A DNA stretch of 64,000 bases from IMGVR_UViG_3300032245_001746:124001-188000; one strand, 5' to 3'. Counted from the first letter of the stretch, positions 34,630-48,882 are shown. The notes: generated by a model not told the origin, from the letters alone. Program-made: numbers and translations.

Positions 34630-34663
34630 TTGAGGTTCTCAATCTTTTTTTTTGGACTTACCA

Positions 34664-35980
34664 ATGAGCAAATTAGTAGTTGAAGTTTGTCAAATTTCAA
34701 AAGTTTCTTCTCACCCTAATGCAGATAAACTTGATGTAATTCAAGTTAAAGGCTGGGATACAATTGTTTCAAAGGGTACGTTTAAAGAAGGTGATAAATG
34801 CATATTTTTCCCTCCAGATTCTGTACTTCAACCAGAACTTTATAATTCCCCAAATGATCCTATCACACCTGGAAGATTAAATAATTCAAATTATTTAAAA
34901 ACATTACCAACTGATTTTGAGGGAAATAAACCTAGTGGCAAAAGAGTTACTGCTTGTCGTCTAAGAGGCTCTGTGTCTTATGGATTGGCAATTCCTCTAG
35001 ATTTAAATTATGGCGATTTAGATTGGGATGTAGGCACTGATGTTTCTGAATTTTTTAAAGTAACTAAATACGAGCCACCAGTTGAATCTGTAATGGGCGA
35101 ATGTGAAAAGTTTAATTCAAGATTTTATCCATATAAAAGCATCGAACATTATGCTAATTTTACAGATCTATTTCAAGATGAAGAAGAAGTAATTTTTACC
35201 GAAAAGGTGCATGGAACCAATTCTAGAGTTGGATTAATTTTAGAACCAGACTCAACAGGAAATTCACAATGGACCTATGCCGCAGGTTCTCATTCTGTTA
35301 GAAGAAAAGAGTTTTCCAACATTGAAACCAGAGTTTTAGCTTCAAAACTTGAAGAAAAAAACATTAAAATTCTTAAAAAAGATGACGTTTCTTATTTTAA
35401 AGATGAAAATGGTATTTTTTGGATGATAAATCAAGAGATAATATCAGATATTGGTATGAAATATCAAGTCGTTCAAGTCAATTCAGATTTTGAATTGATT
35501 AAACGTAAATCTGATTATTGGTTACCATTAACAGAAAATATGAAAAATTTATTGAATTATTTAAAAGATAATTTTAAAACTGAAGAAACAATGCACTCTA
35601 TAATGATTTATGGAGAAATATACGGATTTGGAGTTCAAGATATGTGTTATGGTTTAAATCGTAAATCATACAAAGCTTTTGATATTGCTATTAATAATAT
35701 TTATCTTGATTATGATTATCAAATTGAATTATTTAATAAGTTTAACATTGAAGTTGTTCCTGTATTATATAGAGGACCATTTAGTCAAGAAAAAGTTAAA
35801 GAGTTTACTACTGGACCTACAACCATTTGTGATACAAAAAATGCTGGAAAATTTAAAGGAAGAGAAGGAATTGTGATTAAATCTGTTATTGAAAATAAAA
35901 TGTTTAACAAACCTAGAAAAATAGCAAAATCTGTTTCTGCTGATTATTTGTCAAGAGAAAATGGAACAGAGTTTCACTAA
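34664..35980 (+). CDS. RNA ligase (DRB0094/Rnl2-like with N-terminal OB domain)
   Basis: HPNADKL, RLRG..S.GL, TEKVHGTN (motif I), YGEIYG, AFDI, REGIVIK. Confidence 0.9.
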   Translation: MSKLVVEVCQISKVSSHPNADKLDVIQVKGWDTIVSKGTFKEGDKCIFFPPDSVLQPELYNSPNDPITPGRLNNSNYLKTLPTDFEGNKPSGKRVTACRLRGSVSYGLAIPLDLNYGDLDWDVGTDVSEFFKVTKYEPPVESVMGECEKFNSRFYPYKSIEHYANFTDLFQDEEEVIFTEKVHGTNSRVGLILEPDSTGNSQWTYAAGSHSVRRKEFSNIETRVLASKLEEKNIKILKKDDVSYFKDENGIFWMINQEIISDIGMKYQVVQVNSDFELIKRKSDYWLPLTENMKNLLNYLKDNFKTEETMHSIMIYGEIYGFGVQDMCYGLNRKSYKAFDIAINNIYLDYDYQIELFNKFNIEVVPVLYRGPFSQEKVKEFTTGPTTICDTKNAGKFKGREGIVIKSVIENKMFNKPRKIAKSVSADYLSRENGTEFH

Positions 35981-35989
35981 AGGAAAAAT

Positions 35990-36391
35990 ATGAAATTAGA
36001 ATCTTTTGGAACTTTACTTTATAGAAAAATTAATTCAAAAATAGAAGTTTTACTTGTACACCCATCAGGAAAGTCAGATCAAGCATGGTCTATTCCAAAA
36101 GGAAATAAAAATGATGGTGAAAAAGGAATCGAAGCAGCAGTAAGAGAAACTTTGGAAGAAACTGGAGTTTCAATCAACATTGAAGATTTACATTCATTTG
36201 GTTATGTTGTATATAAATCAAAGAAAGTCGTTCATTGTTATGCGGCTGAAGTGGGTCCAGAAATAAAACCAATTTGTAATTCTTGGGAAGTTGATAAAGC
36301 AGAATTTGTTGAAATAAATAAAACTTTAACAATTATTCATAAAAAACAAGCAGAATTTATTTCTAAATTAATACAACAATTGAAAGTTTAA
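35990..36391 (+). CDS. NUDIX hydrolase
   Basis: PKG.....E....AAVRETLEETG Nudix box; VLLVHP, EVDKAEF. Confidence 0.92.
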   Translation: MKLESFGTLLYRKINSKIEVLLVHPSGKSDQAWSIPKGNKNDGEKGIEAAVRETLEETGVSINIEDLHSFGYVVYKSKKVVHCYAAEVGPEIKPICNSWEVDKAEFVEINKTLTIIHKKQAEFISKLIQQLKV

Positions 36392-36395
36392 AATC

Positions 36396-37400
36396 ATGAA
36401 AATCAAAAAAGATTCTCTCGGAGACAGAATCAAATATTATGAGTCGTTTTGTACAAACACAAGATTATATCATACTATTCCAATTATTATAAGACTTGAT
36501 GGGTGCTCGTTTCATGTCTTTACGAAAGGTTTAAATAGACCATTTGATGAAAGACTTTCTCATTGTATGTTAGAAACAACAAAATTTCTTTGCAAAGAAG
36601 TTAATGCAACTATTGGATATACTCAATCTGACGAAATAACTCTTGTTTTAGGTACTCAAAATTTTGATAGTAAAGTATACTTTGATGCTAAACTTTTTAA
36701 ATTAACTTCTGTTTTAGCTTCTAAGGCAACAGTTAAATTTAACGAGTTGATACGTCAAAATTTACCAGAAAAAGCAAGTAAAAATCCAGTATTTGATTGC
36801 AGGATTTTTAACGTTCCTTCAGAAGAAGAGGCTATTAATTGTTTAATTTGGCGTCAAAATGATGCTAAAAGAAATGCTATTTCAATGGCAGCACAAGCAA
36901 AATTTTCTCACAAAGAATTGCATGGTAAATCTTCTAAGCAAATGTTGGAGATGTTAGAAGCTAAAAATGTTGATTTTAAAAAGTATCCAGGATTTTTCAA
37001 AAATGGAGTTTTTGTTAAAAAGAAAACTTTAACATTCTTAAAAGAATGTTTTGTTAAAATAAATCCAGACAACCTTGTTGTATCCAATAATAGTTTAACT
37101 TCTATTAAAGATTATAGATGGTATATTGAGGAAATTAATTCTAAAAAGTCTATAATTAGATACTCAGATGGATCAATTAATTTAAGTTCTGTAGCTGTAA
37201 CTTATTTAAAATCAGAACAAGAAGCTGAAGATTTAAAAAACTTTATATCTAATGTTTGTGCTAAATTTAGTTTAGAGGATTCTCCAGAATCTTTTACAAG
37301 AAATAATTGGGAAAATGTTTTTGAAGATTTAGAATTATCAAATCTTGAAAACAGAGTTGATTTTGTTTACCGAAACACTGATCCAATTTTTAAAAAGTGA
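36396..37400 (+). CDS. tRNA(His) guanylyltransferase Thg1-like
   Basis: IRLDGCSFH.FT, YTQSDEITL, FDCR, WRQ.DA.RN.I. Confidence 0.92.
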   Translation: MKIKKDSLGDRIKYYESFCTNTRLYHTIPIIIRLDGCSFHVFTKGLNRPFDERLSHCMLETTKFLCKEVNATIGYTQSDEITLVLGTQNFDSKVYFDAKLFKLTSVLASKATVKFNELIRQNLPEKASKNPVFDCRIFNVPSEEEAINCLIWRQNDAKRNAISMAAQAKFSHKELHGKSSKQMLEMLEAKNVDFKKYPGFFKNGVFVKKKTLTFLKECFVKINPDNLVVSNNSLTSIKDYRWYIEEINSKKSIIRYSDGSINLSSVAVTYLKSEQEAEDLKNFISNVCAKFSLEDSPESFTRNNWENVFEDLELSNLENRVDFVYRNTDPIFKK

Positions 37401-37446
37401 TTTACAATTGACACTGATTGCAAATAGAGTAGTTTGCAATCAGTGT
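37401..37446 (+). promoter_or_regulatory. Hairpin overlapping sigma70-like promoter upstream of nicotinamidase
   Basis: 14-bp arms ACACTGATTGCAAA/TTTGCAATCAGTGT; TTGACA at 37408 and TTTACA at 37401. Confidence 0.55.
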
Positions 37447-37470
37447 TTTGTTTTTATTAAAGGGTTTAAA

Positions 37471-38346
37471 ATGAGAAAAATAGATTTGGTAATTATTGAT
37501 CCGCAAAATTCATTTTGCAAAGTTGTTCCACAAGCAGATCAACAAGTTATCCATGATGGAGAACTCTGTGTTCCTGGTGCGTGGGAAAGTATGGCAGTTA
37601 GATTGCCAAAAATGATTGAAAAATCAAAAAAAATGTTTAAGTCAATTAGTGTTACTTTGGATAGCCATAATCCATTCCATATTGCACACCCTTGCTTATA
37701 TAAAGATTCAAAGGGAAATCAACCATCACCATTTACCATCATGCGACAAGAAAATGGTTCAATTATTGGTAGCGTGTTTAATGCATCAACCAATCAATTT
37801 GTTGATGTGGGAGAATATTTTGGTATTAAACCAAGTCTTCACAAAATAATTGTTGAATATTTGATTAAGCTTAAAGCTTTAAACAAATTTCCACATTGTA
37901 TTTGGCCACCACACTGTTTAATTGGAACTTCTGGTCATAATGTTGTACAACCTCTTGCACAAGCTTTGTTTGACTGGACCCAAAGAACAATTGCAAATGT
38001 TGATTATGTTACAAAAGGATCAAATCCTTTCGTTGAACATTTTTCTGCTGTTAAAGCAGAAGTAGAAGATCCGGGAGATCTATCAACACAATTGAATACA
38101 GATTTCATTAAGAAACTCGATGAATCTGACGAGATTGTGTTTGCTGGTGAGGCAAGAAGTCACTGTTTAAATAACACGGTTCGAGATATTGTAGATTCGT
38201 TTTCTGATGATTCTTTCGTTAAGAAATGCGTGTTGCTTCTTGACGCTTGTGATGACGTGCCTGGATTTGAATCATACGGAGAATCTTTTGTTAAAGATAT
38301 GACGGCACGTGGTATGAGAGTTGCTCAAACTACTGATTATGTATAA
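37471..38346 (+). CDS. pncA: Nicotinamidase (long isochorismatase family)
   Basis: IIDPQNSF, LDSH, WPPHC, TKG, AGEA.SHC; start moved to ATG 37471. Confidence 0.8.
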   Translation: MRKIDLVIIDPQNSFCKVVPQADQQVIHDGELCVPGAWESMAVRLPKMIEKSKKMFKSISVTLDSHNPFHIAHPCLYKDSKGNQPSPFTIMRQENGSIIGSVFNASTNQFVDVGEYFGIKPSLHKIIVEYLIKLKALNKFPHCIWPPHCLIGTSGHNVVQPLAQALFDWTQRTIANVDYVTKGSNPFVEHFSAVKAEVEDPGDLSTQLNTDFIKKLDESDEIVFAGEARSHCLNNTVRDIVDSFSDDSFVKKCVLLLDACDDVPGFESYGESFVKDMTARGMRVAQTTDYV

Positions 38347-38365
38347 TTTATAGAAAGGCATAGAA

Positions 38366-39091
38366 ATGTCTAGTGAAAATTTAAGTTCAGGTTTAGATTT
38401 AAATAAAGGTAAAACTTTTAATTTTTCTTCCACAAATATTAATGATCTAGGAGCAGACAGTTATACGCTTGTAACAATAGCTGTCGATACAAGCGGAAGC
38501 ACTTCTTGTTTCATTGATAAAATGGAAAAATTACTTAAAGAAATTGTAAGAGCATGCTCTTTAGATCCAAGAGCAGACAATTTAATGATAAGAATTGTCA
38601 CATTTGATTCACAAGTTTCTGAATTGCATGGCTTTAAACTTTTATCCTCTATCAATCAAGACGATTATCAAGGATCTTTAAGATCAGGCGGAATGACAGC
38701 ATTAAATGATGCTTCTGTCAATTCGATTGAAGGTATCAATAAATATGGAAGAGATTTGCTCGAAAAAGAATTTGGAGTAAACGGATTTTTTATCTGTATA
38801 ACAGATGGTCAAGATAATCAATCGGCTTTACCAGCCTCACGAGTTGCATCTTCTTTAAAAGAATCTGTCAATGGAGAAAACTTGGAATCAATGCTTTCAA
38901 TTTTAATTGAACTTGGTGATTCGACTGAATTGGACAGATTCTACAACGAAGTAGGATTTGATCAACATGTTAAAATTGAAGATGTAACCGAGTCTTCTTT
39001 TGCAAAACTTGCTGGATTTATTAGTAAATCAATCAGTAGTCAAAGCCAAGCCTTAAACAGTGGAGGACCAAGTAAGCCTCTTACATTTTAA
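38366..39091 (+). CDS. VWA domain protein (TerY-like)
   Basis: MIDAS DTSGS, T.L.DA, ITDG.DN.S. Confidence 0.85.
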   Translation: MSSENLSSGLDLNKGKTFNFSSTNINDLGADSYTLVTIAVDTSGSTSCFIDKMEKLLKEIVRACSLDPRADNLMIRIVTFDSQVSELHGFKLLSSINQDDYQGSLRSGGMTALNDASVNSIEGINKYGRDLLEKEFGVNGFFICITDGQDNQSALPASRVASSLKESVNGENLESMLSILIELGDSTELDRFYNEVGFDQHVKIEDVTESSFAKLAGFISKSISSQSQALNSGGPSKPLTF

Positions 39092-39175
39092 TTTTTGTAA
39101 ATAATAAATGTTATTACTCAGATATCTTATCAGATTCAACTATATAAAATTATATAATTTGATAAGGAGTTTAAT

Positions 39176-39923
39176 TTGATTAATTATAGATTTGGTGATT
39201 GGACGGTAATAAAAAAAGTAACAAATATTGAAAAAACAAAAAATTGTAAAACTTATTGGATTTGTCGTTGTAAGTGTGGTTTTGAAAGAAATTTCACTAC
39301 TTCTTACATTAATACAAATCAAGCAACATGTTGTGATCAATGTAAATTTGAAATTAAATTGTCTAAAGATAAAGAAATTCGCGAAAAATATTTAAATACC
39401 AAACATGGAACTTGGGAAGTAATTTCATATTGTGGTAAAAATAAGCATGGTAGTCGCATTTGGATGTGCAGATGCGAGTGTGGAAAAGAAAGAACTTTTT
39501 TAACATCTTATCTTTCTGGAAACGGAAAAAGATCTGCACAAATATGCAAAAATTGTGAATTGAAAAATTTAGAATTAGAAAATAGAATTTTTTTATATAC
39601 CTGATAGATTTTGGTATAAATTTACAAATTCATCACAACGCAGGAACAAATCTGTAGAGATAACAAAAGAACAAGCTAATGATATTTATTTGAAACAAAA
39701 TAAAAAATGTGCATATACGAATATAGATTTATATTTTACTAAATTTAATACTAATTTTAACAGATATACAAATGCATCAATTGATAGAATTGATTCTAGT
39801 AAACCATATACGCTGGAAAATATTCAGTGGGTTGATAAAAAAATTAATATTATGAAAAGTTCTTATAAATCAGAAGAATTTATTAAACTGTGCTGTTTGG
39901 TATCGAAAAAATTTACATTTTGA
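39176..39923 (+). pseudogene. HNH-type (His-Me finger) homing endonuclease split by a frameshift
   Basis: Two W.C.C.CG repeats, then a +1 shift at the T7 run 39588-39594 into IPDRFW...CAYT..SIDRIDSSKPY..NIQWV...N.MK. Confidence 0.75.
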
Positions 39924-39942
39924 TTTTTCAATCAATTGAAAC

Positions 39943-39984
39943 AAAGCCGTTCGAATGAGATTTACTTTTCATTCGAACGGCTTT
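39943..39984. terminator. Strong hairpin upstream of nadE
   Basis: 16-bp arms AAAGCCGTTCGAATGA/TCATTCGAACGGCTTT. Confidence 0.6.
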
Positions 39985-40031
39985 ATCATTTGGTGTCTGC
40001 TTTATTTGTTGAATTTTTAAGGAAATTGAAA

Positions 40032-42068
40032 ATGGAAGATCTTATTAGAGTTGCATGTTGTTCACCCGAAGTTTTTGTTTCTAATCCTGTTAAAAACAGA
40101 ATTGAAATATTGAAGGCAATAAATAAACATGCAAAAAATGCTGATGTTATCGTGTTTCCAGAATTATCTATTACAGGATATACTTGTAAAGATTTATTTC
40201 TTAAAGAAGAATTGTTAAATTCAAGTTTGAAAGAAGTTATAAATTTAGCAAAGGAAATTCCAAGAAACAAATTAGTATTTGTTGGTTGCCCATTACAATT
40301 AAGTAATGGCAAAATAGCTAATTGTGCATTTGGACTTAATGATGGAGTTATTAAAGGCATTGTTCCAAAACAATATTTGCCAAATTATAAAGAATTTGAA
40401 GAAAAAAGATGGTTCACTCAGGATTTAACGGAAGAAATTGATATTGTTTTAGAAAACAATTGTCATGTTCCTTTTGGTTCTAATATTATTTTTCTTTTTG
40501 GAAAAGCAAGAATGGCTGCAGAGGTATGTGAAGATTTATTTGCTCCAATTCCACCATCTACATTTACCGCTATGGCTGGAGCAAATATAATTGTAAATTT
40601 GAGTGCTTCAAATGAACTTATTGGAAAAGCAGAATATAGAAGAAAGTTGGTCGAACAACAAAGTGCCAGAACTCTATCTGCATATATTTATTGTTCTGCT
40701 GGTCCAACTGAATCAACCACCGATTTAGTTTTTGGTGGTCATAATATTATTTCAGAAAATGGTTCTATTTTAAAACAAAGTGAAAGATTTAAAGATTTTT
40801 CATATATCGAATATGATATTGATGTCCAGAAACTTAATCTTGAAAGAAGTGGTAATCCAACTTTTTCTGATTGTCAAAAAAGATTTGTTAAACCTGAAAA
40901 TTTCACATGGGTTCCTATTAATTTGAATCCAAATTTAAAACAAGATATTTTAAGACCAAAAGTTAAAAATCCATTTTTGTCTAATGACCCACAGGTGATG
41001 GAATCAGTATGTGATGAAATTATAAATATTCAAATATGTGCTTTAAAGAAAAGACTAAGTAGACTATCAAGTAGTAAAACTGTAATTGCGGTTTCTGGAG
41101 GATCTGATTCTACTGTAGCTTTATTGTCACTATGTGCAGCATATGATTCAATTGGATTTTCAAGAAAAGACATTTTGGGTATTACCATGCCAGGTTTTGG
41201 AACAAGTAACAGAACCAAAAATAATTCAGATGCTTTAATGGCGAGTCTTGGAATTACTCAAAAAGTAATTGATATTAAGCCAACAGCAACACAAACTTTC
41301 ATTGATATGAATCATATTCCATTCAAAGATTATAATATAACTATAGATGGAATAGAAATGAGCGTTGAAGAATATTTCAGAGGCAAACCTTCTAATTTAA
41401 CAGTTGAAGAAATTAGTAAAGTTCTAAATTATTTGCCTTCAAACGCTAAAGATTTAACGTTTGAAAATGTTCAAGCTAGACTTCGCACATTTTATGCAAT
41501 GAGTAGCGGATTTACTGTTGGAACTGGGGATTTATCAGAAGCAGCACTTGGTTGGTGTACATATAATGGTGATCATATGTCTATGTATAATCCTAATTGT
41601 ACTATTCCAAAAACATTGATTAAGTCATTAATTTTACATTTTGCTAATAATTATTCAAATTATTTCACTCAAGAACTTGGTGGAGATTTAAGTAAAATAT
41701 TAAATTCAATTTATGAAACTGTCATATCTCCAGAACTTTTGCCTTTAAAAGATGGCGAGATTGTTCAGTCTTCTGAAGAAAGTGTTGGATCTTACAACTT
41801 AAATGATTTTTTCTTATATAACTTTATCAGAAACAATTTTTGTTTTTCTAAAATATTAGATTATGCTGTACACTCATATGAAGATGAATATACTAAAGAA
41901 GAAATTGAAAAGTGGTTGAAGTTATTTTTTAAGAGATTTTTTCAGGCACAGTTTAAACGTTCTTGCTGTCCAGATGGACCAAAAGTAGGATCAGTAGGAT
42001 TATCACCAAGAGGTGATTGGAGAATGCCATCAGATGCAGATTTTGATTTATGGTGCAACAATGAATGA
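40032..42068 (+). CDS. nadE: Glutamine-dependent NAD+ synthetase
   Basis: Nitrilase domain (FPELSITGY, PKQYLPNY.EF.EKRWF, CEDL) plus synthetase domain (SGGSDST, ENVQARLR, SPELLP, QFKRS..PDGPK); start at ATG 40032. Confidence 0.96.
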   Translation: MEDLIRVACCSPEVFVSNPVKNRIEILKAINKHAKNADVIVFPELSITGYTCKDLFLKEELLNSSLKEVINLAKEIPRNKLVFVGCPLQLSNGKIANCAFGLNDGVIKGIVPKQYLPNYKEFEEKRWFTQDLTEEIDIVLENNCHVPFGSNIIFLFGKARMAAEVCEDLFAPIPPSTFTAMAGANIIVNLSASNELIGKAEYRRKLVEQQSARTLSAYIYCSAGPTESTTDLVFGGHNIISENGSILKQSERFKDFSYIEYDIDVQKLNLERSGNPTFSDCQKRFVKPENFTWVPINLNPNLKQDILRPKVKNPFLSNDPQVMESVCDEIINIQICALKKRLSRLSSSKTVIAVSGGSDSTVALLSLCAAYDSIGFSRKDILGITMPGFGTSNRTKNNSDALMASLGITQKVIDIKPTATQTFIDMNHIPFKDYNITIDGIEMSVEEYFRGKPSNLTVEEISKVLNYLPSNAKDLTFENVQARLRTFYAMSSGFTVGTGDLSEAALGWCTYNGDHMSMYNPNCTIPKTLIKSLILHFANNYSNYFTQELGGDLSKILNSIYETVISPELLPLKDGEIVQSSEESVGSYNLNDFFLYNFIRNNFCFSKILDYAVHSYEDEYTKEEIEKWLKLFFKRFFQAQFKRSCCPDGPKVGSVGLSPRGDWRMPSDADFDLWCNNE

Positions 42069-42312
42069 ATATGAAGACGAATCTTATTATCAAACTTATA
42101 TTGGATTGATAGAATATTTAAAACTTCATGATTATAAAAGAATCTATTTAGCTAACATGATGTCTCTCCACAAAGATGATATTAAAAAAATGAATTTGTT
42201 TATGTCATTTGATGAAATTCTTGTATCATCAAATGACCAAATAAATTTAACTATAGAAAAAATACAAAAAGCTTTTAATATTAATTTGAAAAAAGGAAAT
42301 GTTCAAATATGA
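42061..42312 (+). CDS. Small hypothetical protein
   Basis: Overlaps the nadE stop and the PP2C start. Confidence 0.6.
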   Translation: MNEYEDESYYQTYIGLIEYLKLHDYKRIYLANMMSLHKDDIKKMNLFMSFDEILVSSNDQINLTIEKIQKAFNINLKKGNVQI

Positions 42313-43109
42313 TTTTTAATCAAGATAATTTTTTATCAATTGGAAGTACGCATGAAATATGTCAAGATTATTCATTGCTTAATGATAAATTTATTGCCGT
42401 ATCAGATGGTTGTTCCGGAAGTAATTTAAGTGATTATGGATCTAGAATTATAACAAAATCTTCTTTAAATAATCAAAACAATTTTGAAGATAAAGAAGCT
42501 TTTGTTAAAACAACAATTAATTCTTCAAAAGAAATTATAAATCATCTTGAACTTCAAGAAGATTGTCTTTGTGCAACATTATTGGCTTGTAAGGCAAATG
42601 AAGATTTTTTTGATGTTTTAATTTGTGGTGATGGAACCATAGTTTGTGAAGATAAATCAAATAATTTGCATGTTTATGAATATTCATATGAATCAGGTGC
42701 TCCTTTTTACCCATTATATCTTCAAAATAAAGATTTAATAAAATTATATTTAGAAAAATTTGGATCATATCACACTTTGAATTATTATAAATATAATTTA
42801 ATAAATTTTGATTTGATTGAGTTTACAACTAGTAAAATTCCCATTAATGAAAATTTAAATACACATAAGTTTCCAACATCTGAATTTATTAGTGTTGCTT
42901 TATTTTCTGATGGTTTGAATTCATTTCAAGTGAAATCAAATAAAACGATTTATTCAAGCAAAAAAGTTCTACAGGATTTGTATGATTTTAAAGGATACAC
43001 TGGTAGATTCTTACTGAGAAGATGCAGAAAGCAGTTCTCTATTTTTGAACAAAATGGTATATCTCATTACGATGATTTTTCTATGGCTATGATAAGGACA
43101 TTAAATTGA
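42309..43109 (+). CDS. PP2C-like phosphatase (TerY-P type)
   Basis: G..H..CQD, AVSDGCS, ATLL, GDG, LFSDG, DD.S. Confidence 0.88.
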   Translation: MIFNQDNFLSIGSTHEICQDYSLLNDKFIAVSDGCSGSNLSDYGSRIITKSSLNNQNNFEDKEAFVKTTINSSKEIINHLELQEDCLCATLLACKANEDFFDVLICGDGTIVCEDKSNNLHVYEYSYESGAPFYPLYLQNKDLIKLYLEKFGSYHTLNYYKYNLINFDLIEFTTSKIPINENLNTHKFPTSEFISVALFSDGLNSFQVKSNKTIYSSKKVLQDLYDFKGYTGRFLLRRCRKQFSIFEQNGISHYDDFSMAMIRTLN

Positions 43110-43666
43110 AAAAAGTTGTTATCTTTGGAACATCTGGAAACCCAATCCATATTGGACATGAATTAATAATTAAAGAAATTTCTAAACATTTTGATGAAGT
43201 GTGGGTTTGTCCTTCTTATAAATCATCAATTAAAAATTTAATTGATTCAAAACACAGATTGAAAATGACTGAAATTTCGGTTAATTCGTTAAATAACGAT
43301 AAAGTTAAAATTTTTGACCATGAAATAAAAAATAAAATTTCCGTAAACACATATGATTTTTTAAAATATTTAAAATCCACTTTCTCAGATAAACAATTTT
43401 ACTTTGGTATAGGTGCAGATAACACTAAAGATATATTAAATTGGAAAAATTCAAATGATCTTATAAATGAAAACAACTTTTTAATCTTTAAAAGAAAAGG
43501 TTATGATTTAAATGTAAATATTTTTAAATCATATGAGACAATTGATGTTGAATTTATTGATGTGAGTTCTACTTATATAAGAAATAATATTAGAAATGAA
43601 AATGTTAAAAGTCTTCTGAATCCAGAAGTTTACAATTACATTGTTGAAAACAATCTCTATTTTTAG
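43106..43666 (+). CDS. nadD: Nicotinate-nucleotide adenylyltransferase
   Basis: NPIHIGH, HRL.M, IGADN...W, VSSTYIR, VYNYI..NLY. Confidence 0.9.
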   Translation: MKKVVIFGTSGNPIHIGHELIIKEISKHFDEVWVCPSYKSSIKNLIDSKHRLKMTEISVNSLNNDKVKIFDHEIKNKISVNTYDFLKYLKSTFSDKQFYFGIGADNTKDILNWKNSNDLINENNFLIFKRKGYDLNVNIFKSYETIDVEFIDVSSTYIRNNIRNENVKSLLNPEVYNYIVENNLYF

Positions 43667-43673
43667 GTGAATC

Positions 43674-45392
43674 ATGAAGTATTTTATAAAAGGTGGCGAC
43701 TCAGTAGATCTTTCTCAAAAAGATTTTATTGCATCTGGTGGTTTTGGCAAAGTTTATAAAAAAAATAATTTTGCATACAAAATATATGATAATCCATCCA
43801 ATATGCTTCCAATTGAAAAAATATCAGAATTAGCAGTATTAAAAGATCAAGATATAATAAAGCCAGAGAGAATAATTACAAATTCATCTAAAGAATTTGT
43901 AGGTTACACAATGCGTTACGTAAAAGGTTCTCCTATATGCAAAATGTTTACACACACTTTCAAAAAGAACAATAAAATAACAGACAAAATTTGTTTATCG
44001 CTTTTGAGCAAATTTTATACAAAAATAGAACATGTACATTCTAACAATATTTTGTTGGTAGACGTAAACGAACTTAATTTTTTAGTAAATGATTCGTTTA
44101 ACGAAATTTATTTTATAGATACAGATGGCTATCAAACTAAATCATTTAAAGCCACTGGCATAATGGATAGTATTAGAGATCGACATTGTCAAAATAATGA
44201 CTTTAATGAAAATACTGATTGGTTTTCTTGGGGAATACTTGCTTGTCAATTAATTACTGGACTCCACCCTTATCGTGGAGGGCATCCTGATTTTGACAAT
44301 ATTGATCTTGCTAAAAGAATGGATGCAAGAATGATTAAAAATATTTCTATTTTTAATTCAAAAACCAAACTTCCTCCTTTTATTAAAAATTTTGATAATA
44401 TTCCATCTGCACTTAAACAATGGTTTATTTCAGTTTTTGAAAATGGCAAAAGGATTAAACCTCCAAAAGACTTTGACTCAGTAATTATATTGACTCCAAT
44501 TAATGTAAAGGAAATAACAGGAACAAACTTATTTGATATATCTTTACTTTATTCTTTCAAACAAGAATTAATTAAATATAAAGAAATAAATGGAGATAAA
44601 TTTGCATTGTTGAATGATAAATTAATTTTTAACGATAAGTCTTACAATATTCCAAATGTAAAATCTGAATTGTTTTTTAATGTTCCATCTTCTTTAAATA
44701 AACCATTTGTTTATTACATAGAAAATGAAACATTAAAATGTTTTGATTGCATTTATCAAACAGAAATTGAATGTTCTTTAAAATCTACTGATATTTTTCA
44801 AGTTGATGATAGAATTTATTATGTAAATAAAGATAAATTTTATGAAATTGAAATTATTAAATTATCAAATAAAGTAATTGTTGAATCTAATTCTGTAGGA
44901 AATGCATTAGATATTCCTAATGCAACCAAATCATTTGATGGAACATTAATGCAAAACATGTTGGGAAGACATTATTTTTCAATTAATCCTAAATCTAGAT
45001 TCAGCTATCAAATAGGAATTAAAGAATTAGATTCTTATACAGTTATTGATGCGAAATATGAAAAAAATGTTTTAATAGTTTCTGCAATTACCAGAAAAGG
45101 TATTAATGAAAAATTTGTAATTAGATTTAATTCTAATTATACTTCTTATTCTTTAAGAAAGATATCTAATGTTCAAAATTCTGATGTTAATTTTACAGTA
45201 AATCAATCTGGAATTTGCATATTCCTAGTTGATGACTCAAATATAGAAATATTTTCTAATAATTCTGAGACAACTTCTGTTAAATCATTTAATGATCAAA
45301 GTATAGATACTAGTATGATCCTAACATCCAATGCATCAAAAGTAATGTTTGTAAAAGATAAATCAGTTTATTCTATATCTGTTAAAAACTAA
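43674..45392 (+). CDS. Ser/Thr kinase (TerY-P type) with C-terminal extension
   Basis: GGFGKVY, AYKIY, DVNELNFLV, IDTD.YQ, TDWFS...HPY.G. Confidence 0.88.
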   Translation: MKYFIKGGDSVDLSQKDFIASGGFGKVYKKNNFAYKIYDNPSNMLPIEKISELAVLKDQDIIKPERIITNSSKEFVGYTMRYVKGSPICKMFTHTFKKNNKITDKICLSLLSKFYTKIEHVHSNNILLVDVNELNFLVNDSFNEIYFIDTDGYQTKSFKATGIMDSIRDRHCQNNDFNENTDWFSWGILACQLITGLHPYRGGHPDFDNIDLAKRMDARMIKNISIFNSKTKLPPFIKNFDNIPSALKQWFISVFENGKRIKPPKDFDSVIILTPINVKEITGTNLFDISLLYSFKQELIKYKEINGDKFALLNDKLIFNDKSYNIPNVKSELFFNVPSSLNKPFVYYIENETLKCFDCIYQTEIECSLKSTDIFQVDDRIYYVNKDKFYEIEIIKLSNKVIVESNSVGNALDIPNATKSFDGTLMQNMLGRHYFSINPKSRFSYQIGIKELDSYTVIDAKYEKNVLIVSAITRKGINEKFVIRFNSNYTSYSLRKISNVQNSDVNFTVNQSGICIFLVDDSNIEIFSNNSETTSVKSFNDQSIDTSMILTSNASKVMFVKDKSVYSISVKN

Positions 45393-45393
45393 T

Positions 45394-45777
45394 TTATTTT
45401 AAGTTTTTCAATTTATAAACTGTTTTATAACTTAAAGCTATCATTTCGTCAAGAATATTTTGCAAATGACTATCTTCTAGAGATTTACTGTAATTCTTTG
45501 TTGTTTCAATAAATTTTTGTAAGTATGATACTACATCAGTAGCTTCTACATCTTTTATTTTATATGTTTTAATAATTCCATATTGACCTTGGTAGGTTTC
45601 AATAAAGTCATCTGTTAAATCTAAAATCTTTTCATAAAATTCATTTAGAGCCTTGTGTTCTGAATATGAATTTGTTTGCAAATGTTTAATGTGAATTTGA
45701 TTTCTTGCACTAAAAAGTAACGAAGCAAATTCTGTTATGTTAATTTTTTCTGATTTAAATTCATTAATTGTTTTCAT
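45394..45777 (-). CDS. Ferritin/Dps-like protein (DUF5856-like) with leader
   Basis: H..H.QT.SY.EHKAL..FY....D.F.E.YQG; N-terminus MKTINEFKSE. Confidence 0.75.
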   Translation of the reverse strand: MKTINEFKSEKINITEFASLLFSARNQIHIKHLQTNSYSEHKALNEFYEKILDLTDDFIETYQGQYGIIKTYKIKDVEATDVVSYLQKFIETTKNYSKSLEDSHLQNILDEMIALSYKTVYKLKNLK

Positions 45778-45785
45778 ATTTTTTC

Positions 45786-46592
45786 CTAGTAGTTAATCCA
45801 TAAGCATTCAACTTTTTGTTGCTTAACTTTACTTTGAGACGCATGGTTTGGTACAGTTTTCTTTACGCACTTCCATCCCTTATATAATCGTTTATATAAT
45901 GCAGATTGATAACCACTTAAAACAACTTTTCCTTTAAAGTTGTTTAAAACATGTGCAAGTTTAATATGTTGGTCAGTATCTAGCTCAAATTCATAGCATT
46001 CTTTTGCAACACGTGTATCTGGAAGATATGGTGGGTCTACATAGCAAAGTGTTTCTTTTTCATCAAATGCTTTAATTGCATCAAATGCATTTTTATTTAA
46101 TAAAAATGTTTCTTTTAATCTCTTTGAAATAATTGGTAGTTCTTCTAAAATTGTAATCCAAGCATTAACTTCTCCAGGATTGCCTCCTCTTGTGCGATCT
46201 GACCAAGAAAATGCTTTTTTTAATCCGCCTCTTGACATTCTTCTAATTACAAATTCATTTATTGCATAATCCAGATCGGAATTTTTAGAAGTTTTTTCAT
46301 ACAATGATTTTTCAAATGATTCTTTGCAATATTCTATTTTTTTTAATTTCTTTATAAAAACATTGTTTTCATCTCTCAAGGCTCTAAGTATTTGCACTAC
46401 GCCTGGATCTAAATCATTTAAGATTTCTGTTTTTGATGGCTTTTTATTCAAAAAAACACTTGCAGCACCACAAAATGGCTCTAAATAATTTAATTGTTCA
46501 TAATTTTCTGGGAAATTATCAATTATCCAACCGTGGAGATAATTTTTACCACCATGAATTTTAAAAGGTGGTCTAATTTTTTCTTTTGTCAT
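45786..46592 (-). CDS. DNA adenine methyltransferase (D12/Dam family)
   Basis: GGK, YLEPFCGAASV, LNDLD, DPPY; start likely ATG 46592. Confidence 0.9.
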   Translation of the reverse strand: MTKEKIRPPFKIHGGKNYLHGWIIDNFPENYEQLNYLEPFCGAASVFLNKKPSKTEILNDLDPGVVQILRALRDENNVFIKKLKKIEYCKESFEKSLYEKTSKNSDLDYAINEFVIRRMSRGGLKKAFSWSDRTRGGNPGEVNAWITILEELPIISKRLKETFLLNKNAFDAIKAFDEKETLCYVDPPYLPDTRVAKECYEFELDTDQHIKLAHVLNNFKGKVVLSGYQSALYKRLYKGWKCVKKTVPNHASQSKVKQQKVECLWINY

Positions 46593-46791
46593 TGCGTGCT
46601 TTCTGATCAAAATTGTGAATTGCACAATTGCAAATATGGCAATTTATATCAAAATTGCCATATTTATCTTGCCAGAACCAAGCGTTTTTTAATTGTTTAG
46701 AATTTTGACAACTTTCGCATATCGCAACTACAACTTGCTCTTCAAAAGGCACAGAATTGTCTATCCAAAAATAACATGGTTTATTGTGCAT
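46573..46791 (-). CDS. Small Zn-ribbon protein
   Basis: CESC and CHIC pairs. Confidence 0.55.
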   Translation of the reverse strand: MHNKPCYFWIDNSVPFEEQVVVAICESCQNSKQLKNAWFWQDKYGNFDINCHICNCAIHNFDQKARNDKRKN

Positions 46792-46807
46792 AAACAAATA
46801 ATAGTAA

Positions 46808-47335
46808 TTACTTTGCAGAAATCCACTTTAAAAATTCAGATTCTGATCTATTTCCTACTATAGTTTTTCCAATTTGAGTTCCATCACTTTTCAAATGAAT
46901 GAAAGTTGGTATAGCTTGAATTTTAAATTGAGTAGTTAATTCACGATTATTATCAGTGTTAATAACAACATAGTGATAATTCTTCAATTCTTTTTTTACA
47001 TTTTCTTTTGAAAGAGTATTGGATTTCATTTGTTTACAAGAAGAACACCATTCAGCAGTAAAAAATAAAATTATTTCTTTTTGATCTTTTTTTGCTTTTT
47101 CCAATACTTGTGAATACTCCTCGCCAGAATATTCTCTCCATTCTTCACTTTCTTCAGGTTTAATTGGATCTGTTTCTTTAGGTGGTTGTGATTCTTGCTC
47201 TTGATGATGCTGCGGCTCTTGTATCGGCAAATTATTCTTTAAATCATCCATTTGCATCTTGGTATTATAAGAAATCATAGTACCAATGACTAATATTGCA
47301 AGCGACATGTTGTGTGTACTCCTTTTCACGATCAA
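46808..47335 (-). CDS. Membrane-anchored thioredoxin-like protein
   Basis: N-terminal hydrophobic segment; FTAEWCSSC, IPT; AGGAGG RBS. Confidence 0.85.
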   Translation of the reverse strand: MIVKRSTHNMSLAILVIGTMISYNTKMQMDDLKNNLPIQEPQHHQEQESQPPKETDPIKPEESEEWREYSGEEYSQVLEKAKKDQKEIILFFTAEWCSSCKQMKSNTLSKENVKKELKNYHYVVINTDNNRELTTQFKIQAIPTFIHLKSDGTQIGKTIVGNRSESEFLKWISAK

Positions 47336-47433
47336 ATCCTCCTGTCAAACCGATTCTACAACAATATTTATGATTTTGAAGTAAAAAAAACTCTTTTTAT
47401 AATAAATAAAATAAGTTTTAAAGCGGAGCAACA

Positions 47434-48309
47434 ATGAAAACATTTAGTAAATATATAGAAAATCAAAATATTGAAGGTAAAATTGTACAAATAGCTACAA
47501 TATTGTCAGAATCTAATTTAGAGCCAAATATCTTTTTAAAAACATGGTTTGACAAAAATGATCCTGATTTATCCTTAGTATTAACTGAAGCTGGAATGTG
47601 GGATGGTATAAAACAAGGAATAGGCGCAGTTGGTGCTGGTCTCAAACAAGGATTTCAAAATTTTAAAAATAATGCTTTCGGACCAGAAACACATTATACA
47701 AATGCGGTCACATCATTAAATAAACTTCTTAATTTCATTGAAGCAGATCCAAATTTAAAACAAAATTATTCAAGATTTACAAATAACATTAGCGGAATAT
47801 TAAATGATTTAAAAGCAAATCAAGGTGATGTTCCAATGAGCAATAATGGTCAATGGACATCAAGAAATCAAAATTCTTTCAATAATGTTAATCCTCAACA
47901 ACCAGTTCAGCCACAGCCTAATGTTCAACAACAATCACAACCTCAACAACCTGCTCCTGTGCAACAACAATCTAATTCGATGTATGATGTGAACGCAAGA
48001 GCAAAAGCTAAAAGAGCAGGACAAAATCAACCTCAGTTTCAATCACAATCACAACAAGTGAATCAACAACTTCCACAGTCTCACCAACAACAAAATCAAT
48101 TGCCACCTGGACTACAACCAGTTAGTGGCTTAACAAGTGGATCGCATCCAGATAATTATGCTTGGAACCCAAATTCTAATACTTATATGTTTAAAAAATG
48201 GAATCCAAAAACAAAAAGTTATTCTTGGGAACGCACCAATAGAATAATGGGTAATAATCATAATAACAACAAAGTTCAGAGCGATATTGAATGGCTTAGA
48301 AATCAATAA
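47434..48309 (+). CDS. Gln/Asn-rich protein with leader
   Basis: MKTFSKYIE; internal LTE-AG; QP-rich tail. Confidence 0.75.
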   Translation: MKTFSKYIENQNIEGKIVQIATILSESNLEPNIFLKTWFDKNDPDLSLVLTEAGMWDGIKQGIGAVGAGLKQGFQNFKNNAFGPETHYTNAVTSLNKLLNFIEADPNLKQNYSRFTNNISGILNDLKANQGDVPMSNNGQWTSRNQNSFNNVNPQQPVQPQPNVQQQSQPQQPAPVQQQSNSMYDVNARAKAKRAGQNQPQFQSQSQQVNQQLPQSHQQQNQLPPGLQPVSGLTSGSHPDNYAWNPNSNTYMFKKWNPKTKSYSWERTNRIMGNNHNNNKVQSDIEWLRNQ

Positions 48310-48317
48310 AGGAAAAC

Positions 48318-48491
48318 ATGTTATTAACATATAAACAATGGTGCGAAAATATGTGGGGAAACACTCCATCTAACATGAGAAAACCTTCTGATGGTTGGGC
48401 ATGTAAACAGAGTTATTCTTCGAATAGTTCTTCAGCAGGTAGTGGTAGTCAACCAATGCAAAAAAGTATGAAAAAGAAAATGAAGAAATAA
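48318..48491 (+). CDS. 57-aa protein with leader (below ORF-track cutoff)
   Basis: AAGGA RBS; MLLTYKQWCE...SMKKKMKK; stop abuts terminator. Confidence 0.7.
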   Translation: MLLTYKQWCENMWGNTPSNMRKPSDGWACKQSYSSNSSSAGSGSQPMQKSMKKKMKK

Positions 48492-48520
48492 AAAAAGCCA
48501 CAGTTAACTGTGGCTTTTTT
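48491..48520. terminator. Bidirectional terminator (perfect 30-bp palindrome)
   Basis: AAAAAAGCCACAGTT/AACTGTGGCTTTTTT. Confidence 0.85.
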
Positions 48521-48543
48521 GTTTAGTTTGATTTCAAATAAAA

Positions 48544-48882
48544 TTATTCAACAAAAGGTACACCTGTTGAAACAACGATATAGTTGTGAACAACATTACC
48601 ACCAGTAATTGTGAAAGAAACGAAATTTGAATCAGAATTGTTTGTTTTAGCAACAACAGGAAGTGTTGAGCCAGAAGCAGCAGTTACAACAACTGCATAC
48701 TTAGTATGATCGCCAGTCAAAGGTGCTGGAAATGTTACAGTTGCTGTTCCACCGCTAAGTGTAACAACGCCTGCTGTAATAACACGTGGACTCAAAAGAG
48801 GTACGAAATTGTTTCTTCCATTTTTTGGACCTTTGTGTTTAGCTGCTCCTAAACCTTTTCCTGTTACAGATGTAGCACTCAT
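48544..48882 (-). CDS. Probable virion structural / decoration protein
   Basis: Small V/T/G-rich beta protein, strong AGGAG RBS. Confidence 0.6.
   Translation of the reverse strand: MSATSVTGKGLGAAKHKGPKNGRNNFVPLLSPRVITAGVVTLSGGTATVTFPAPLTGDHTKYAVVVTAASGSTLPVVAKTNNSDSNFVSFTITGGNVVHNYIVVSTGVPFVE

What the first reader, a model, noticed from the sequence alone, without database searches (positions are those of the whole stretch)
37471..45392. TerY-P-like VWA-PP2C-kinase triad interleaved with NAD salvage enzymes in a phage
Seen: order pncA, VWA, (endonuclease), nadE, small ORF, PP2C, nadD, kinase, with overlapping stop/start junctions from nadE to nadD. Known: VWA+PP2C+kinase triads (TerY-P) are bacterial stress and anti-phage modules. 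Inference: the alternation points to a single system in which a phosphorylation switch controls, or responds to, NAD salvage. Alternatively it is a captured defence module used against competing phages.
Basis: partly seen in the sequence, partly recalled or inferred. Interest (0 to 1): 0.78.

Follow-up and report, generated by a model that had tools for sequence, protein, structure and literature searches.

The report
Phosphorylation-linked NAD salvage module in phage
A jumbo phage carries a widespread but apparently undescribed four-gene unit (an unusually long nicotinamidase, a VWA protein, a PP2C phosphatase and a kinase with a beta-propeller) with NAD-synthesis genes spliced into it, which suggests that recycling of nicotinamide into NAD is placed under a phosphorylation switch.

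Summary
The gene order and the overlapping junctions are real. The window is part of a 320-kb T4-like jumbo phage from wastewater and river metagenomes.

- **Core unit:** the conserved core is four genes, not a triad: long-type nicotinamidase PncA (I), VWA/MIDAS protein (V), PP2C (P) and a Ser/Thr kinase fused to a 7-bladed beta-propeller (K).
- **Conservation:** I-V-P-K is complete in 68 of 69 phage or metagenome loci and in 29 of 36 bacterial loci with enough flank.
- **Attached genes:** PncB, NadE, NadD, NrtR, NADAR, ARH, PARG and Tpt1 attach to it again and again, in many different orders. PncB/NadE insert at four different positions, with at least 26 gains or losses.
- **Long versus short PncA:** the long PncA clade goes with V/P/K. 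Short PncA next to PncB in other phages never does.
- **Not TerY-P:** no PADLOC match, and the kinase has a propeller instead of a zinc ribbon or OB fold.
- **The endonuclease:** it is a frameshifted mobile HNH insertion that related strains lack.

The mechanism (phosphorylation gating of the first salvage step) is inferred, not shown. I found no description of this module in the literature.

The parts
37410..37447 (+). Terminator-like hairpin (16-bp stem followed by a T run) between the Thg1-like gene and pncA. It marks the upstream edge of the unit.
   Evidence: one of only two terminator-like sites in 34-46 kb; sequence.
37471..38346 (+). I: long-type nicotinamidase PncA (291 aa). Catalytic D10, K182 and C232 and the metal site D64, H66 and H148 are invariant. 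The long-type-specific insert covers about residues 113-141.
   Evidence: (profile hits Pnc1 2h0r at 8.9e-16, also P. horikoshii and M. tuberculosis PncA).
38366..39091 (+). V: VWA-domain protein (241 aa) with an intact MIDAS motif (D41-x-S-x-S45, T111, D147) and an invariant Ser-rich C-terminal helix and tail (F218, S220, S222, S224, S227, G233).
   Evidence: 17 of 34 family members hit VWA_2; AF2 pLDDT 88.5; Foldseek: ITIH1, CMG2, integrin I and ArnB VWA domains.
39176..39923 (+). Intruder, not part of the system: an HNH homing endonuclease broken by a +1 frameshift near 39600. It is a mobile insertion at the 3' end of the VWA gene, flanked by TTACATTTT, and is absent in related strains.
   Evidence: the two pieces match residues 1-137 and 141-240 of a 245-aa homologue; contigs of three runs skip 39049->39913.
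39943..39984 (+). Perfect 18-bp hairpin just upstream of nadE. It may be a terminator or attenuator, or the end of the HNH insertion.
   Evidence: dG -36.9 kcal/mol, z -6.2, 0 of 200 shuffles fold as well.
40032..42068 (+). NadE: glutamine-dependent NAD+ synthetase (CN_hydrolase plus NAD_synthase domains).
   Evidence: NF002730, 730.7 bits, cut-off 473; ATG at 40032.
42061..42312 (+). orf83: small ORF that overlaps both neighbours. It has no detectable homologue, even in syntenic phages, and its function is unknown.
42309..43109 (+). P: PP2C-type Ser/Thr phosphatase (266 aa). The metal-binding Asp motifs are invariant (D20, D33-G34, G107-D108-G109, D201-G202, D255-D256).
43106..43666 (+). NadD: nicotinate-mononucleotide adenylyltransferase (186 aa), with a TTG start that overlaps the PP2C stop.
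   Evidence: (TIGR00482, 126.4 bits, cut-off 112.45).
43674..45392 (+). K: Hanks-type Ser/Thr kinase (residues 1-270) fused to a 7-bladed beta-propeller (residues 285-572). Conserved kinase residues: K36, E52, D130-x4-N135, D149, activation-loop T155 and T161, and the D182-W-F-S motif.
   Evidence: AF2 pLDDT 87.5, 28 strands; top hits LRRK2 kinase-WD40 and the Vps18, clathrin and Nup133 propellers.

Best explanation
The region is one NAD-salvage unit built around a conserved four-gene module, I-V-P-K: long-type nicotinamidase PncA, a VWA/MIDAS protein, a PP2C phosphatase and a Ser/Thr kinase with a beta-propeller.

**Shown.**
- The four genes form an almost obligate, co-directional unit in uncultivated jumbo phages and in Acidobacteriota, Armatimonadota and other bacteria.
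- All four keep their catalytic or metal-binding residues.
- The long PncA clade occurs with V/P/K, and short PncA does not.
- Genes of the Preiss-Handler route (PncB, NadD, NadE) and of ADP-ribose handling (NrtR, NADAR, ARH, PARG, Tpt1) join the module repeatedly and independently.

**Inferred.**
- In this phage, PncA converts nicotinamide to nicotinate. Nicotinamide is the product of NAD-cleaving host defences and of NAD-consuming enzymes.
- A PncB, from the host or from elsewhere in the genome, then makes NaMN. The phage's NadD and NadE finish NAD+.
- The kinase and PP2C form a reversible switch that gates this entry step through the VWA protein.
- The likeliest version: the propeller docks the invariant C-terminal tail of V, the kinase phosphorylates its Ser-rich last helix, and V binds PncA through the long-type insert.

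The net role in the phage is to keep or rebuild NAD+ during infection, as NARP1-3 do, but by a regulated deamidated route.
For: **Conservation of the core.**
- Kinase-anchored loci: I-V-P-K complete in 68 of 69 phage or metagenome loci and in 29 of 36 genome loci with enough flank.
- PncA-anchored metagenome loci: V in 49 of 52, V plus K in 22 of 23, V plus P plus K in 20 of 23.

**Long-type PncA goes with V/P/K.**
- PncB-anchored phage loci: all 10 long PncA have V/P/K. All 22 short PncA (median 218 aa) have none and form one clade with 99% support, a single change on a 145-sequence tree.

**Attachment of NAD genes.**
- PncB, NadE or NadD lie within 10 kb in 52% of phage loci and 44% of genome loci. 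Some NAD- or ADP-ribose-related gene is present in 70% and 78%.
- PncB/NadE are placed upstream, between V and P, between P and K, or downstream in different kinase clades. This needs at least 26 gains or losses and 29 placement changes.
- Two NadE types (about 265-300 aa and about 600-700 aa) and two PncB size classes were recruited.
- In bacteria NrtR (NUDIX plus NrtR_WHD) lies directly upstream. L090 reads NrtR-PncA-VWA-NADAR-ARH-kinase-PncB-PARG.

**Active sites intact.** PncA, MIDAS, PP2C, kinase.

**Gene spacing.**
- I-V is the tightest junction. Median gaps in bacteria are 24, 61 and -4 bp for I-V, V-P and P-K. In phages insertions go into V|P and P|K but rarely into I|V.
- The window has overlapping start and stop codons from nadE to nadD.

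**Expression hint.** Contigs from three wastewater metatranscriptome libraries cover nadE to the kinase, and one bridges nadE-orf83-PP2C.

**Background from the literature.** NAD-cleaving defences release ADPR and nicotinamide, and phages rebuild NAD+ (10.1101/2024.02.11.579819, PMC13464706). Jumbo phages carry Preiss-Handler genes (PMC11662467).
Against: - There is no direct evidence that anything is phosphorylated, that V binds PncA or the propeller, or that nicotinamidase activity is regulated. No consistent gene fusions support an interaction.
- PncB, needed between PncA and NadD, is absent from the 64-kb window. This contig is not among the best 80 of 377 viral PncB loci.
- About half of the phage loci have no PncB, NadE or NadD within 10 kb. 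The core may therefore serve something other than full salvage.
- PP2C is missing in several bacterial lineages and is replaced by NADAR plus ARH in two. This fits an ADP-ribosylation circuit as well as a salvage switch.
- The RNA-library contigs are unstranded and may derive from DNA.
- Family assignment used HMMs built iteratively from these same loci. The locus counts include 11 near-duplicates.
Confidence: 0.55

Rival explanations
1. ADP-ribosylation circuit. I-V-P-K would be part of a system that writes, reads or erases protein or nucleic-acid ADP-ribosylation rather than a salvage regulator. PncA would remove nicotinamide, the product inhibitor of ADP-ribosyltransferases, sirtuins and NADases. 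The VWA protein would bind modified targets. Ser phosphorylation by K would compete or cross-talk with ADP-ribosylation.
For: - NADAR (14 loci), ARH (11), Tpt1 (11) and PARG (5) are recurrent neighbours.
- In L090 and L100, NADAR plus ARH occupy the place of PP2C between V and K.
- NrtR, which responds to ADP-ribose, lies upstream in bacteria.
- PMC9503650 proposes VWA 'peptide-binding chaperones' in ARH-centred, NrtR-regulated bacterial systems.
Against: - No ADP-ribosyltransferase or sirtuin was found as a conserved partner among the families scored.
- The most frequent partners are biosynthetic: PncB in 43% and 42% of phage and genome loci, NadE in 36% of phage loci.
- The window itself has NadE and NadD but no ARH, NADAR or PARG in the unit.
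- The ARH-centred systems of PMC9503650 are described without PncA, PP2C or a kinase.
Confidence: 0.2
2. Conflict module analogous to TerY-P. The VWA-PP2C-kinase triad would be a defence, counter-defence or exclusion switch whose kinase acts on host or competitor proteins, with PncA as its effector or accessory. The phage would have captured it from bacteria, as in the reader's alternative.
For: - VWA-PP2C-STK triads are known as signalling switches attached to defence systems, and stand-alone TerY-P-like triads protect against phage (PMC11090510).
- The kinase domain weakly resembles the PD-T4-6 defence kinase (E 7.7e-07).
- The region lies beside an RNA-repair (counter-defence-like) cluster of RNA ligase, NUDIX and Thg1.
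- The module moves between phages and bacteria.
Against: - No V-family member (0 of 34) matches a VWA or TerY model in PADLOC, and the window's PP2C matches no PADLOC model.
- The kinase has a beta-propeller, not the zinc ribbon or OB fold of TerY-P kinases.
- Bacterial copies follow taxonomy (Capsulimonadaceae, Chthonomonadaceae and Pyrinomonadaceae clades). They sit beside ordinary chromosomal genes and NAD genes, not restriction or abortive-infection genes.
- This reading does not explain the obligate, clade-specific long nicotinamidase.
Confidence: 0.17
3. Coincidence. Unrelated accessory genes would have piled up in a variable region of a large phage genome and been inherited together.
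For: - The closest relatives (L003, L010, L013, L080) share much of the same order, which could reflect common descent.
- Homing endonucleases and other small ORFs also accumulate here.
Against: - Linkage holds across kinases only 23-45% identical, in phages and in several bacterial phyla.
- NAD genes are inserted at four different positions, with at least 26 gains or losses.
- Non-orthologous NadE and PncB types are used.
- Independent anchoring on PncA and on PncB gives the same result.
Confidence: 0.03

Closest known systems
TerY-P triad (TerY-like VWA, PP2C and Ser/Thr kinase; Anantharaman et al. 2012, Gao et al. 2020, as summarised in PMC11090510)
   Same: It has the same three-part logic: a MIDAS-type VWA protein, a PP2C phosphatase and a Hanks-type kinase encoded together. 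It is thought to act as a phosphorylation switch attached to variable partner genes.
   Different: - There is no detectable sequence membership.
- The kinase carries a 7-bladed beta-propeller instead of a zinc ribbon or OB fold.
- There is a fourth obligate gene, a long nicotinamidase.
- The partners are NAD and ADP-ribose enzymes, not Ter, McrBC or CoCoNuT components.
Phage NAD+ reconstitution pathways NARP1 (Adps plus Namat), NARP2 (NadV plus NMNAT) and NARP3 (PnuC plus NadR-like)
   Same: These are phage-encoded routes that restore NAD+, using nicotinamide or related precursors, in the conflict with NAD-depleting defences (10.1101/2024.02.11.579819; PMC13464706).
   Different: - The chemistry differs: the deamidated Preiss-Handler route through PncA, (PncB), NadD and NadE.
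- None of the NARP enzymes is in the unit.
- The known pathways have no kinase, phosphatase or VWA component.
- Counter-defence activity is untested here.
'NAD-jumbo phages' that carry salvage or Preiss-Handler genes (PMC11662467)
   Same: They are jumbo phages that encode PncB, NadD and NadE-type enzymes.
   Different: - That survey does not mention a kinase, phosphatase, VWA protein or nicotinamidase.
- This study separates two phage PncA types. The short type sits next to PncB without V/P/K. The long type always has V/P/K.
NrtR regulon of bacterial NAD metabolism (Nudix-related, ADP-ribose-responsive repressor)
   Same: In Acidobacteriota and Armatimonadota, NrtR lies directly upstream of I-V-P-K, often with PncB. 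This fits the usual placement of NrtR next to the salvage genes it controls.
   Different: - VWA, PP2C and kinase genes inside such operons were not found described in the searched literature.
- NrtR binding sites were not examined.
Canonical nicotinamidases (yeast Pnc1, M. tuberculosis and P. horikoshii PncA)
   Same: The Asp-Lys-Cys triad and the Asp/His/His metal site align residue for residue.
   Different: The protein is about 265-300 aa instead of about 180-220 aa. It has a conserved insert before the WPxHC motif (window residues about 113-141) and further long-type blocks.

Membership tests
TerY-P triad | TerY-like VWA protein | tested here: not met
   The fold is VWA with a MIDAS motif. 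However, 0 of 34 family members match any VWA or TerY model in PADLOC, and none of the listed Pfam matches is the TerF-like vWA family. That PADLOC v2 holds TerY-P models is my own knowledge and was not checked.
TerY-P triad | PP2C-like phosphatase encoded with the VWA protein and kinase | tested here: met
   PP2C_2 at 45.1 bits against a cut-off of 24. The metal-binding Asp motifs are invariant. It is adjacent to the kinase in most loci.
TerY-P triad | Ser/Thr kinase with a C-terminal zinc ribbon (or an OB fold in the stand-alone defence form) | tested here: not met
   The C-terminal 285-572 is a 7-bladed beta-propeller with 28 strands. Foldseek hits are LRRK2 kinase-WD40 and the Vps18, clathrin and Nup133 propellers. 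Definition taken from PMC11090510.
TerY-P triad | Anti-phage or tellurite-stress function | not testable with these tools
   This needs infection assays.
Nicotinamidase (PncA/Pnc1, isochorismatase superfamily) | Asp-Lys-Cys catalytic triad | tested here: met
   D10, K182 and C232 are invariant in 32 sequences. They align to Pnc1 and to P. horikoshii and M. tuberculosis PncA.
Nicotinamidase (PncA/Pnc1, isochorismatase superfamily) | Asp/His/His metal site (DxH ... H) | tested here: met
   D64 and H66 ('LDSH') and H148 ('WPPHC') are invariant. They align to 'RDWH' and 'WPVHC' of Pnc1.
Nicotinamidase (PncA/Pnc1, isochorismatase superfamily) | Nicotinamide deamidase activity | not testable with these tools
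   This needs an enzyme assay. The single-sequence Pfam and NCBIfam scores are below the curated cut-offs.
VWA / MIDAS domain | DxSxS ... T ... D metal-ion-dependent adhesion site on a Rossmann-like fold | tested here: met
   D41, S45, T111 and D147 are invariant. The AF2 model has pLDDT 88.5 and pTM 0.86. All top Foldseek hits are VWA domains.
Hanks-type Ser/Thr protein kinase | Gly-rich loop, catalytic Lys and Glu, catalytic-loop D-x4-N, Mg-binding Asp, and the helical GHI lobe | tested here: met
   G22-G23, K36 and E52, D130 to N135, D149, D182-W-F-S and R219 are conserved. Pkinase scores 34 bits against a cut-off of 31.7. Structural hits are protein kinases. The HRD His-Arg is not conserved.
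Preiss-Handler NAD pathway (PncA, PncB, NadD, NadE) | All four enzymes present | tested here: inconclusive
   PncA, NadD and NadE are present. No PncB lies in the 64-kb window. The rest of the 320-kb contig could not be read, and the contig is not among the best 80 viral PncB loci. Relatives L003, L010, L013 and L080 have PncB between V and NadE.
NARP1 / NARP2 / NARP3 | Adps plus Namat; NadV plus NMNAT; or PnuC plus NadR-like | tested here: not met
   None of these families appears in the Pfam or NCBIfam results for the genes of 34-49 kb. Definitions are and PMC13464706.

The most novel reading that the evidence does not exclude
I-V-P-K would be a previously unrecognised, widespread signalling device that puts the first step of nicotinamide recycling under reversible Ser/Thr phosphorylation. 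The VWA protein would be the phospho-regulated adaptor of a dedicated long nicotinamidase, and the kinase's propeller the docking or sensing part. Jumbo phages would use it as the regulated core of a fourth kind of NAD+ reconstitution pathway against NAD-depleting immunity. Acidobacteriota and Armatimonadota would use it inside the NrtR regulon. This would be the first post-translational control of NAD salvage described in prokaryotes or their viruses.
Probability: 0.3. Interest if true: 0.88.

Novelty: new variant of a known kind. Interest (0 to 1): 0.78.

Why it matters
NAD+ depletion is a major arm of bacterial immunity, and phage NAD+ reconstitution (NARP1-3) is a young field. All known pathways are plain enzyme pairs.

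- **Regulation:** a deamidated route whose entry enzyme is obligately tied to a kinase, a phosphatase and a VWA protein would add regulation and perhaps sensing to this conflict.
- **A concrete partner for the triad:** VWA-PP2C-kinase triads are still poorly understood. Here the triad has a biochemically tractable partner, an enzyme with a simple assay, so its logic can be tested directly.
- **Scale:** the module occurs in at least 583 metagenome stretches, 70 IMG/VR contigs and at least 109 species-representative genomes. It is unannotated beyond 'hypothetical protein' or 'protein kinase' and is absent from cultured phages in GenBank.
- **Annotation:** the split between short and long phage PncA types is useful for annotating 'NAD-jumbo phages'.

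Tried and rejected
- **DNA search of GenBank phages with the whole region:** no match. The protein search with the kinase found only three unannotated huge-phage records.
- **Single-protein scans of IMG/VR:** these returned only the window's own contig. The alignment-based scans were needed.
- **PADLOC:** nothing for I, V or P. The kinase domain gave only generic kinase similarity.
- **PDB sequence search with the VWA profile:** nothing meaningful. The fold had to be shown by prediction.
- **Promoter scan:** uninformative in this AT-rich DNA (76 sites found, 76.2 expected).
- **orf83:** no homologue in any locus, no similarity to the ORF at the same position in L003, and no atlas lead.
- **Rosetta-stone fusions among I, V, P and K:** only one doubtful hybrid ORF, in L083.
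- **PncB elsewhere in this phage:** not resolved.
- **Anantharaman et al. 2012 on TerY-P:** not held in the library. I used the summary in PMC11090510.
- **Giant eukaryotic virus origin:** considered because of the 26% GC, and rejected. The window has a T4-type tail sheath stabiliser, HNH and LAGLIDADG elements, an IMG/VR origin and relatives with T4 gp13.
- **Small-molecule kinase:** considered and judged unlikely. The model has the full protein-kinase C-lobe, and the nearest structures are protein kinases.

Full report
**What the window is.** The window is part of IMGVR_UViG_3300032245_001746, a 319,857-bp viral contig.
- It has about 26% GC.
- It carries phage hallmarks: a T4-type tail sheath stabiliser, and HNH and LAGLIDADG homing endonucleases.
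- Relatives encode T4 gp13-like proteins.
- The same sequence, or close strains, occurs in wastewater, river and activated-sludge metagenomes.
- It has no near relative among GenBank phages.

| Gene | Coordinates |
|---|---|
| pncA-like | 37471-38346 |
| VWA | 38366-39091 |
| HNH endonuclease | 39176-39923 |
| nadE | 40032-42068 |
| small ORF (orf83) | 42061-42312 |
| PP2C | 42309-43109 |
| nadD | 43106-43666 |
| kinase | 43674-45392 |

- NadE and NadD pass NCBIfam equivalog cut-offs (730.7 against 473 bits; 126.4 against 112.45 bits). PP2C_2 and Pkinase pass Pfam cut-offs.
- The junctions are ATGAATGA, ATGA and TTGA overlaps, then a 7-nt spacer with AGGTGA.
- A terminator-like hairpin precedes pncA at 37410-37447. 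A perfect 18-bp hairpin precedes nadE at 39943-39984 (z -6.2).
- The next gene downstream is on the other strand.

**The two weakly annotated genes.**
- *pncA-like.* A profile of 32 family members hits solved nicotinamidases: yeast Pnc1 at 8.9e-16, and P. horikoshii and M. tuberculosis PncA. The alignment runs through the catalytic Asp, Lys and Cys and the Asp/His/His metal site, all invariant in the family.
- *VWA.* The 241-aa protein has no Pfam hit on its own, but half of its relatives hit VWA_2 or VWA. The MIDAS residues are invariant. The AlphaFold model (pLDDT 88.5) matches VWA domains only. Its last helix and tail are Ser-rich and almost invariant (F218, S220, S222, S224, S227, G233).
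- *PP2C.* It keeps all metal-binding Asp motifs.

**The kinase.** It has several hundred full-length relatives at 35-54% identity.
- The model (pLDDT 87.5) is a protein-kinase domain followed by 28 strands, which form a 7-bladed beta-propeller. LRRK2 (kinase plus WD40) and the Vps18, clathrin and Nup133 propellers are the best matches.
- The catalytic Lys and Glu, D-x4-N, the Mg-binding Asp and two activation-loop Thr residues are conserved.

**The endonuclease is an intruder.**
- Its two ORFs match residues 1-137 and 141-240 of an intact 245-aa homologue in different frames.
- Contigs from two metatranscriptome libraries and one DNA run of related strains jump from 39049 to 39913. They keep the VWA C-terminus and omit the endonuclease.
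- The insertion is flanked by TTACATTTT.
- Without it, VWA is followed almost directly by the hairpin and nadE.

**Linkage elsewhere.** I aligned 25 kinases and fetched 70 IMG/VR loci and 80 of at least 109 loci in species-representative genomes, each with 10-kb flanks. I then classified all ORFs with iteratively built HMMs.
- The result is a conserved co-directional unit, PncA-VWA-PP2C-kinase (I-V-P-K).
- It is complete in 68 of 69 phage or metagenome loci and in 29 of 36 genome loci with enough flank.
- The bacterial carriers are mainly Acidobacteriota (Pyrinomonadaceae, Blastocatellia) and Armatimonadota (Capsulimonadaceae, Chthonomonadaceae), with some Myxococcota, Spirochaetota and CPR. 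Several sit on chromosomes of 4-6 Mb.
- The one bacterial flank I scanned (L091) holds ordinary chromosomal genes.
- In bacteria the operon is compact, with median gaps of 24, 61 and -4 bp.

**Anchoring on other genes gives the same answer.**
- *Anchored on long PncA in JGI metagenomes.* At least 583 stretches were found. V follows in 49 of 52 loci with room, V plus K in 22 of 23, and V plus P plus K in 20 of 23.
- *Anchored on PncB in IMG/VR.* PncA next to PncB is of two kinds. The short kind (median 218 aa, n=22) has no V/P/K and forms one clade with 99% support. The long kind (267-301 aa, n=10) always has V/P/K. This is a single change on a 145-sequence tree.
- The long type has a conserved insert before the WPxHC motif, at window residues about 113-141.
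- So the triad depends on the long nicotinamidase, while NAD salvage clusters can exist without the triad.

**The company the module keeps.**
- PncB lies within 10 kb in 43% of phage loci and 42% of genome loci. In phage loci NadE is present in 36% and NadD in 23%.
- Clustering of the unassigned neighbours added NADAR (14 loci), Tpt1/KptA (11), ADP-ribosylglycohydrolase (11) and PARG (5).
- The Nudix proteins upstream in bacteria are true NrtR regulators, with NUDIX plus NrtR_WHD domains.
- L090 reads NrtR-PncA-VWA-NADAR-ARH-kinase-PncB-PARG.
- On the kinase tree, PncB/NadE sit upstream of I, between V and P, between P and K, or downstream of K in different clades. This needs at least 26 gains or losses.
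- Two NadE types and two PncB size classes are used. This rules out a single inherited accident.
- In the window's own clade the order is I-V-PncB-NadE-P-NadD-K. Here PncB is missing where the endonuclease now sits.

**Mechanism.**
- *Shown:* intact active sites, obligate co-occurrence, the tight I-V and P-K pairs, and translational coupling in the window.
- *Inferred:* PncA feeds nicotinamide into the Preiss-Handler route, which NadD and NadE complete. The kinase and PP2C reversibly modify the VWA protein, whose Ser-rich C-terminus is the best candidate substrate and whose invariant tail may dock the propeller. V in turn controls or scaffolds the long PncA.
- The biological setting is the NAD+ conflict. 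Many defences cleave NAD+ to ADPR and nicotinamide, and phages rebuild it (10.1101/2024.02.11.579819; PMC13464706).
- An ADP-ribosylation-centred reading remains a serious rival, because of the ARH, NADAR, PARG and Tpt1 neighbours and the swap of PP2C for NADAR plus ARH.

**Comparison with what is known.**
- *TerY-P* (VWA, PP2C, and a kinase with a zinc ribbon or OB fold; PMC11090510) is an analogue, not the family. There are no PADLOC matches, and the kinase C-terminus differs.
- *NARP1-3* use other enzymes and have no signalling genes.
- *The 'NAD-jumbo phage' survey* reports Preiss-Handler genes but does not mention a kinase, phosphatase, VWA protein or nicotinamidase.
- *Two broad comparative papers* on viral NAD/ADPr systems and on jumbo phages do not describe this module.
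- No cultured phage in GenBank has the kinase.

**Limits.**
- Everything on function is comparative.
- Locus sets contain near-duplicates (11 removed for the tree), and some phage contigs are binned as MAGs.
- The trees are FastTree with a midpoint root.
- The RNA-library contigs are unstranded and may be DNA.
- Only 64 kb of the phage genome was readable.

Noticed in passing
window 39049-39923: The HNH homing endonuclease is frameshifted (+1 near 39600). It is a population-polymorphic insertion at the very 3' end of the VWA gene, flanked by TTACATTTT. Its own C-terminus (..FTF) mimics the VWA C-terminus (..LTF). The same HNH family sits beside the VWA gene in several other phages (L008, L020, L021, L028, L057, L077).
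   Followed up: yes
window 34652-37400: An RNA-repair-like trio lies directly upstream: RNA ligase (PHA02142 OB plus RNA_ligase), a small NUDIX protein and a Thg1-like 3'-5' nucleotidyltransferase. It is syntenic with the module in L006 and L010. Together with the NAD unit it looks like a counter-defence island.
   Followed up: partly
window 17143-22128: A 1661-aa Gly/Ser/Thr/Ala-rich ORF with internal repeats (for example 'NFEQLRIRSNSTQYE.SSI.GSAGGS') explains the local GC spike (46% against about 26%). It has no Pfam or PHROG match and is probably a fibre or other structural protein.
   Followed up: partly
whole contig (kinase P0001; loci L080, L240): The identical kinase is also recorded on a 530,789-bp contig. 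The closest relative lies on a 546-kb contig binned as a Bacteriovoracaceae MAG, with the same V-PncB-NadE-P-NadD-K order. These are probably megaphage genomes, and the MAG assignment is doubtful.
   Followed up: no
L090:5458-13761 and L100:149-8486: In two Armatimonadota loci, NADAR plus ADP-ribosylglycohydrolase replace PP2C between the VWA gene and the kinase. L090 reads NrtR-PncA-VWA-NADAR-ARH-kinase-PncB-PARG; L100 reads PncA-VWA-NADAR-ARH-kinase-PncB followed by the methyltransferase-domain protein. Several Blastocatellia loci lack PP2C altogether (I-V-K).
   Followed up: partly
L082:1773-4001 and 21 other bacterial loci: A protein of about 740 aa, with an N-terminal SAM methyltransferase domain and a long unknown C-terminal part, follows the kinase in 22 bacterial loci and in no phage locus.
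   Followed up: partly
L020:1016-12429: This phage locus has Tpt1/KptA (NAD-dependent RNA 2'-phosphotransferase) between PP2C and the kinase. It also has a full NrtR (NUDIX plus NrtR winged helix) that overlaps the kinase stop, so a phage carries the bacterial NAD regulator.
   Followed up: partly
window 45394-49525: The downstream block is syntenic with L003: a DUF5856 / phrog_858 'starvation-inducible regulator'-like protein, a D12 adenine methyltransferase, thioredoxin and a LAGLIDADG endonuclease.
   Followed up: no
window 60303-61583: A DUF1501 protein with a very strong Pfam score (374.6 bits) is encoded in a phage. It lies beside glycosyltransferases and TPR and ankyrin proteins elsewhere in the window, which is unusual cargo and might hint at the host.
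   Followed up: no
window 42061-42312: orf83 overlaps both nadE and PP2C yet has no homologue. Relatives have unrelated small ORFs at the same spot (98 aa in L003, 170 aa in L010, 114 aa in L008), so this is a variable slot just upstream of PP2C.
   Followed up: partly
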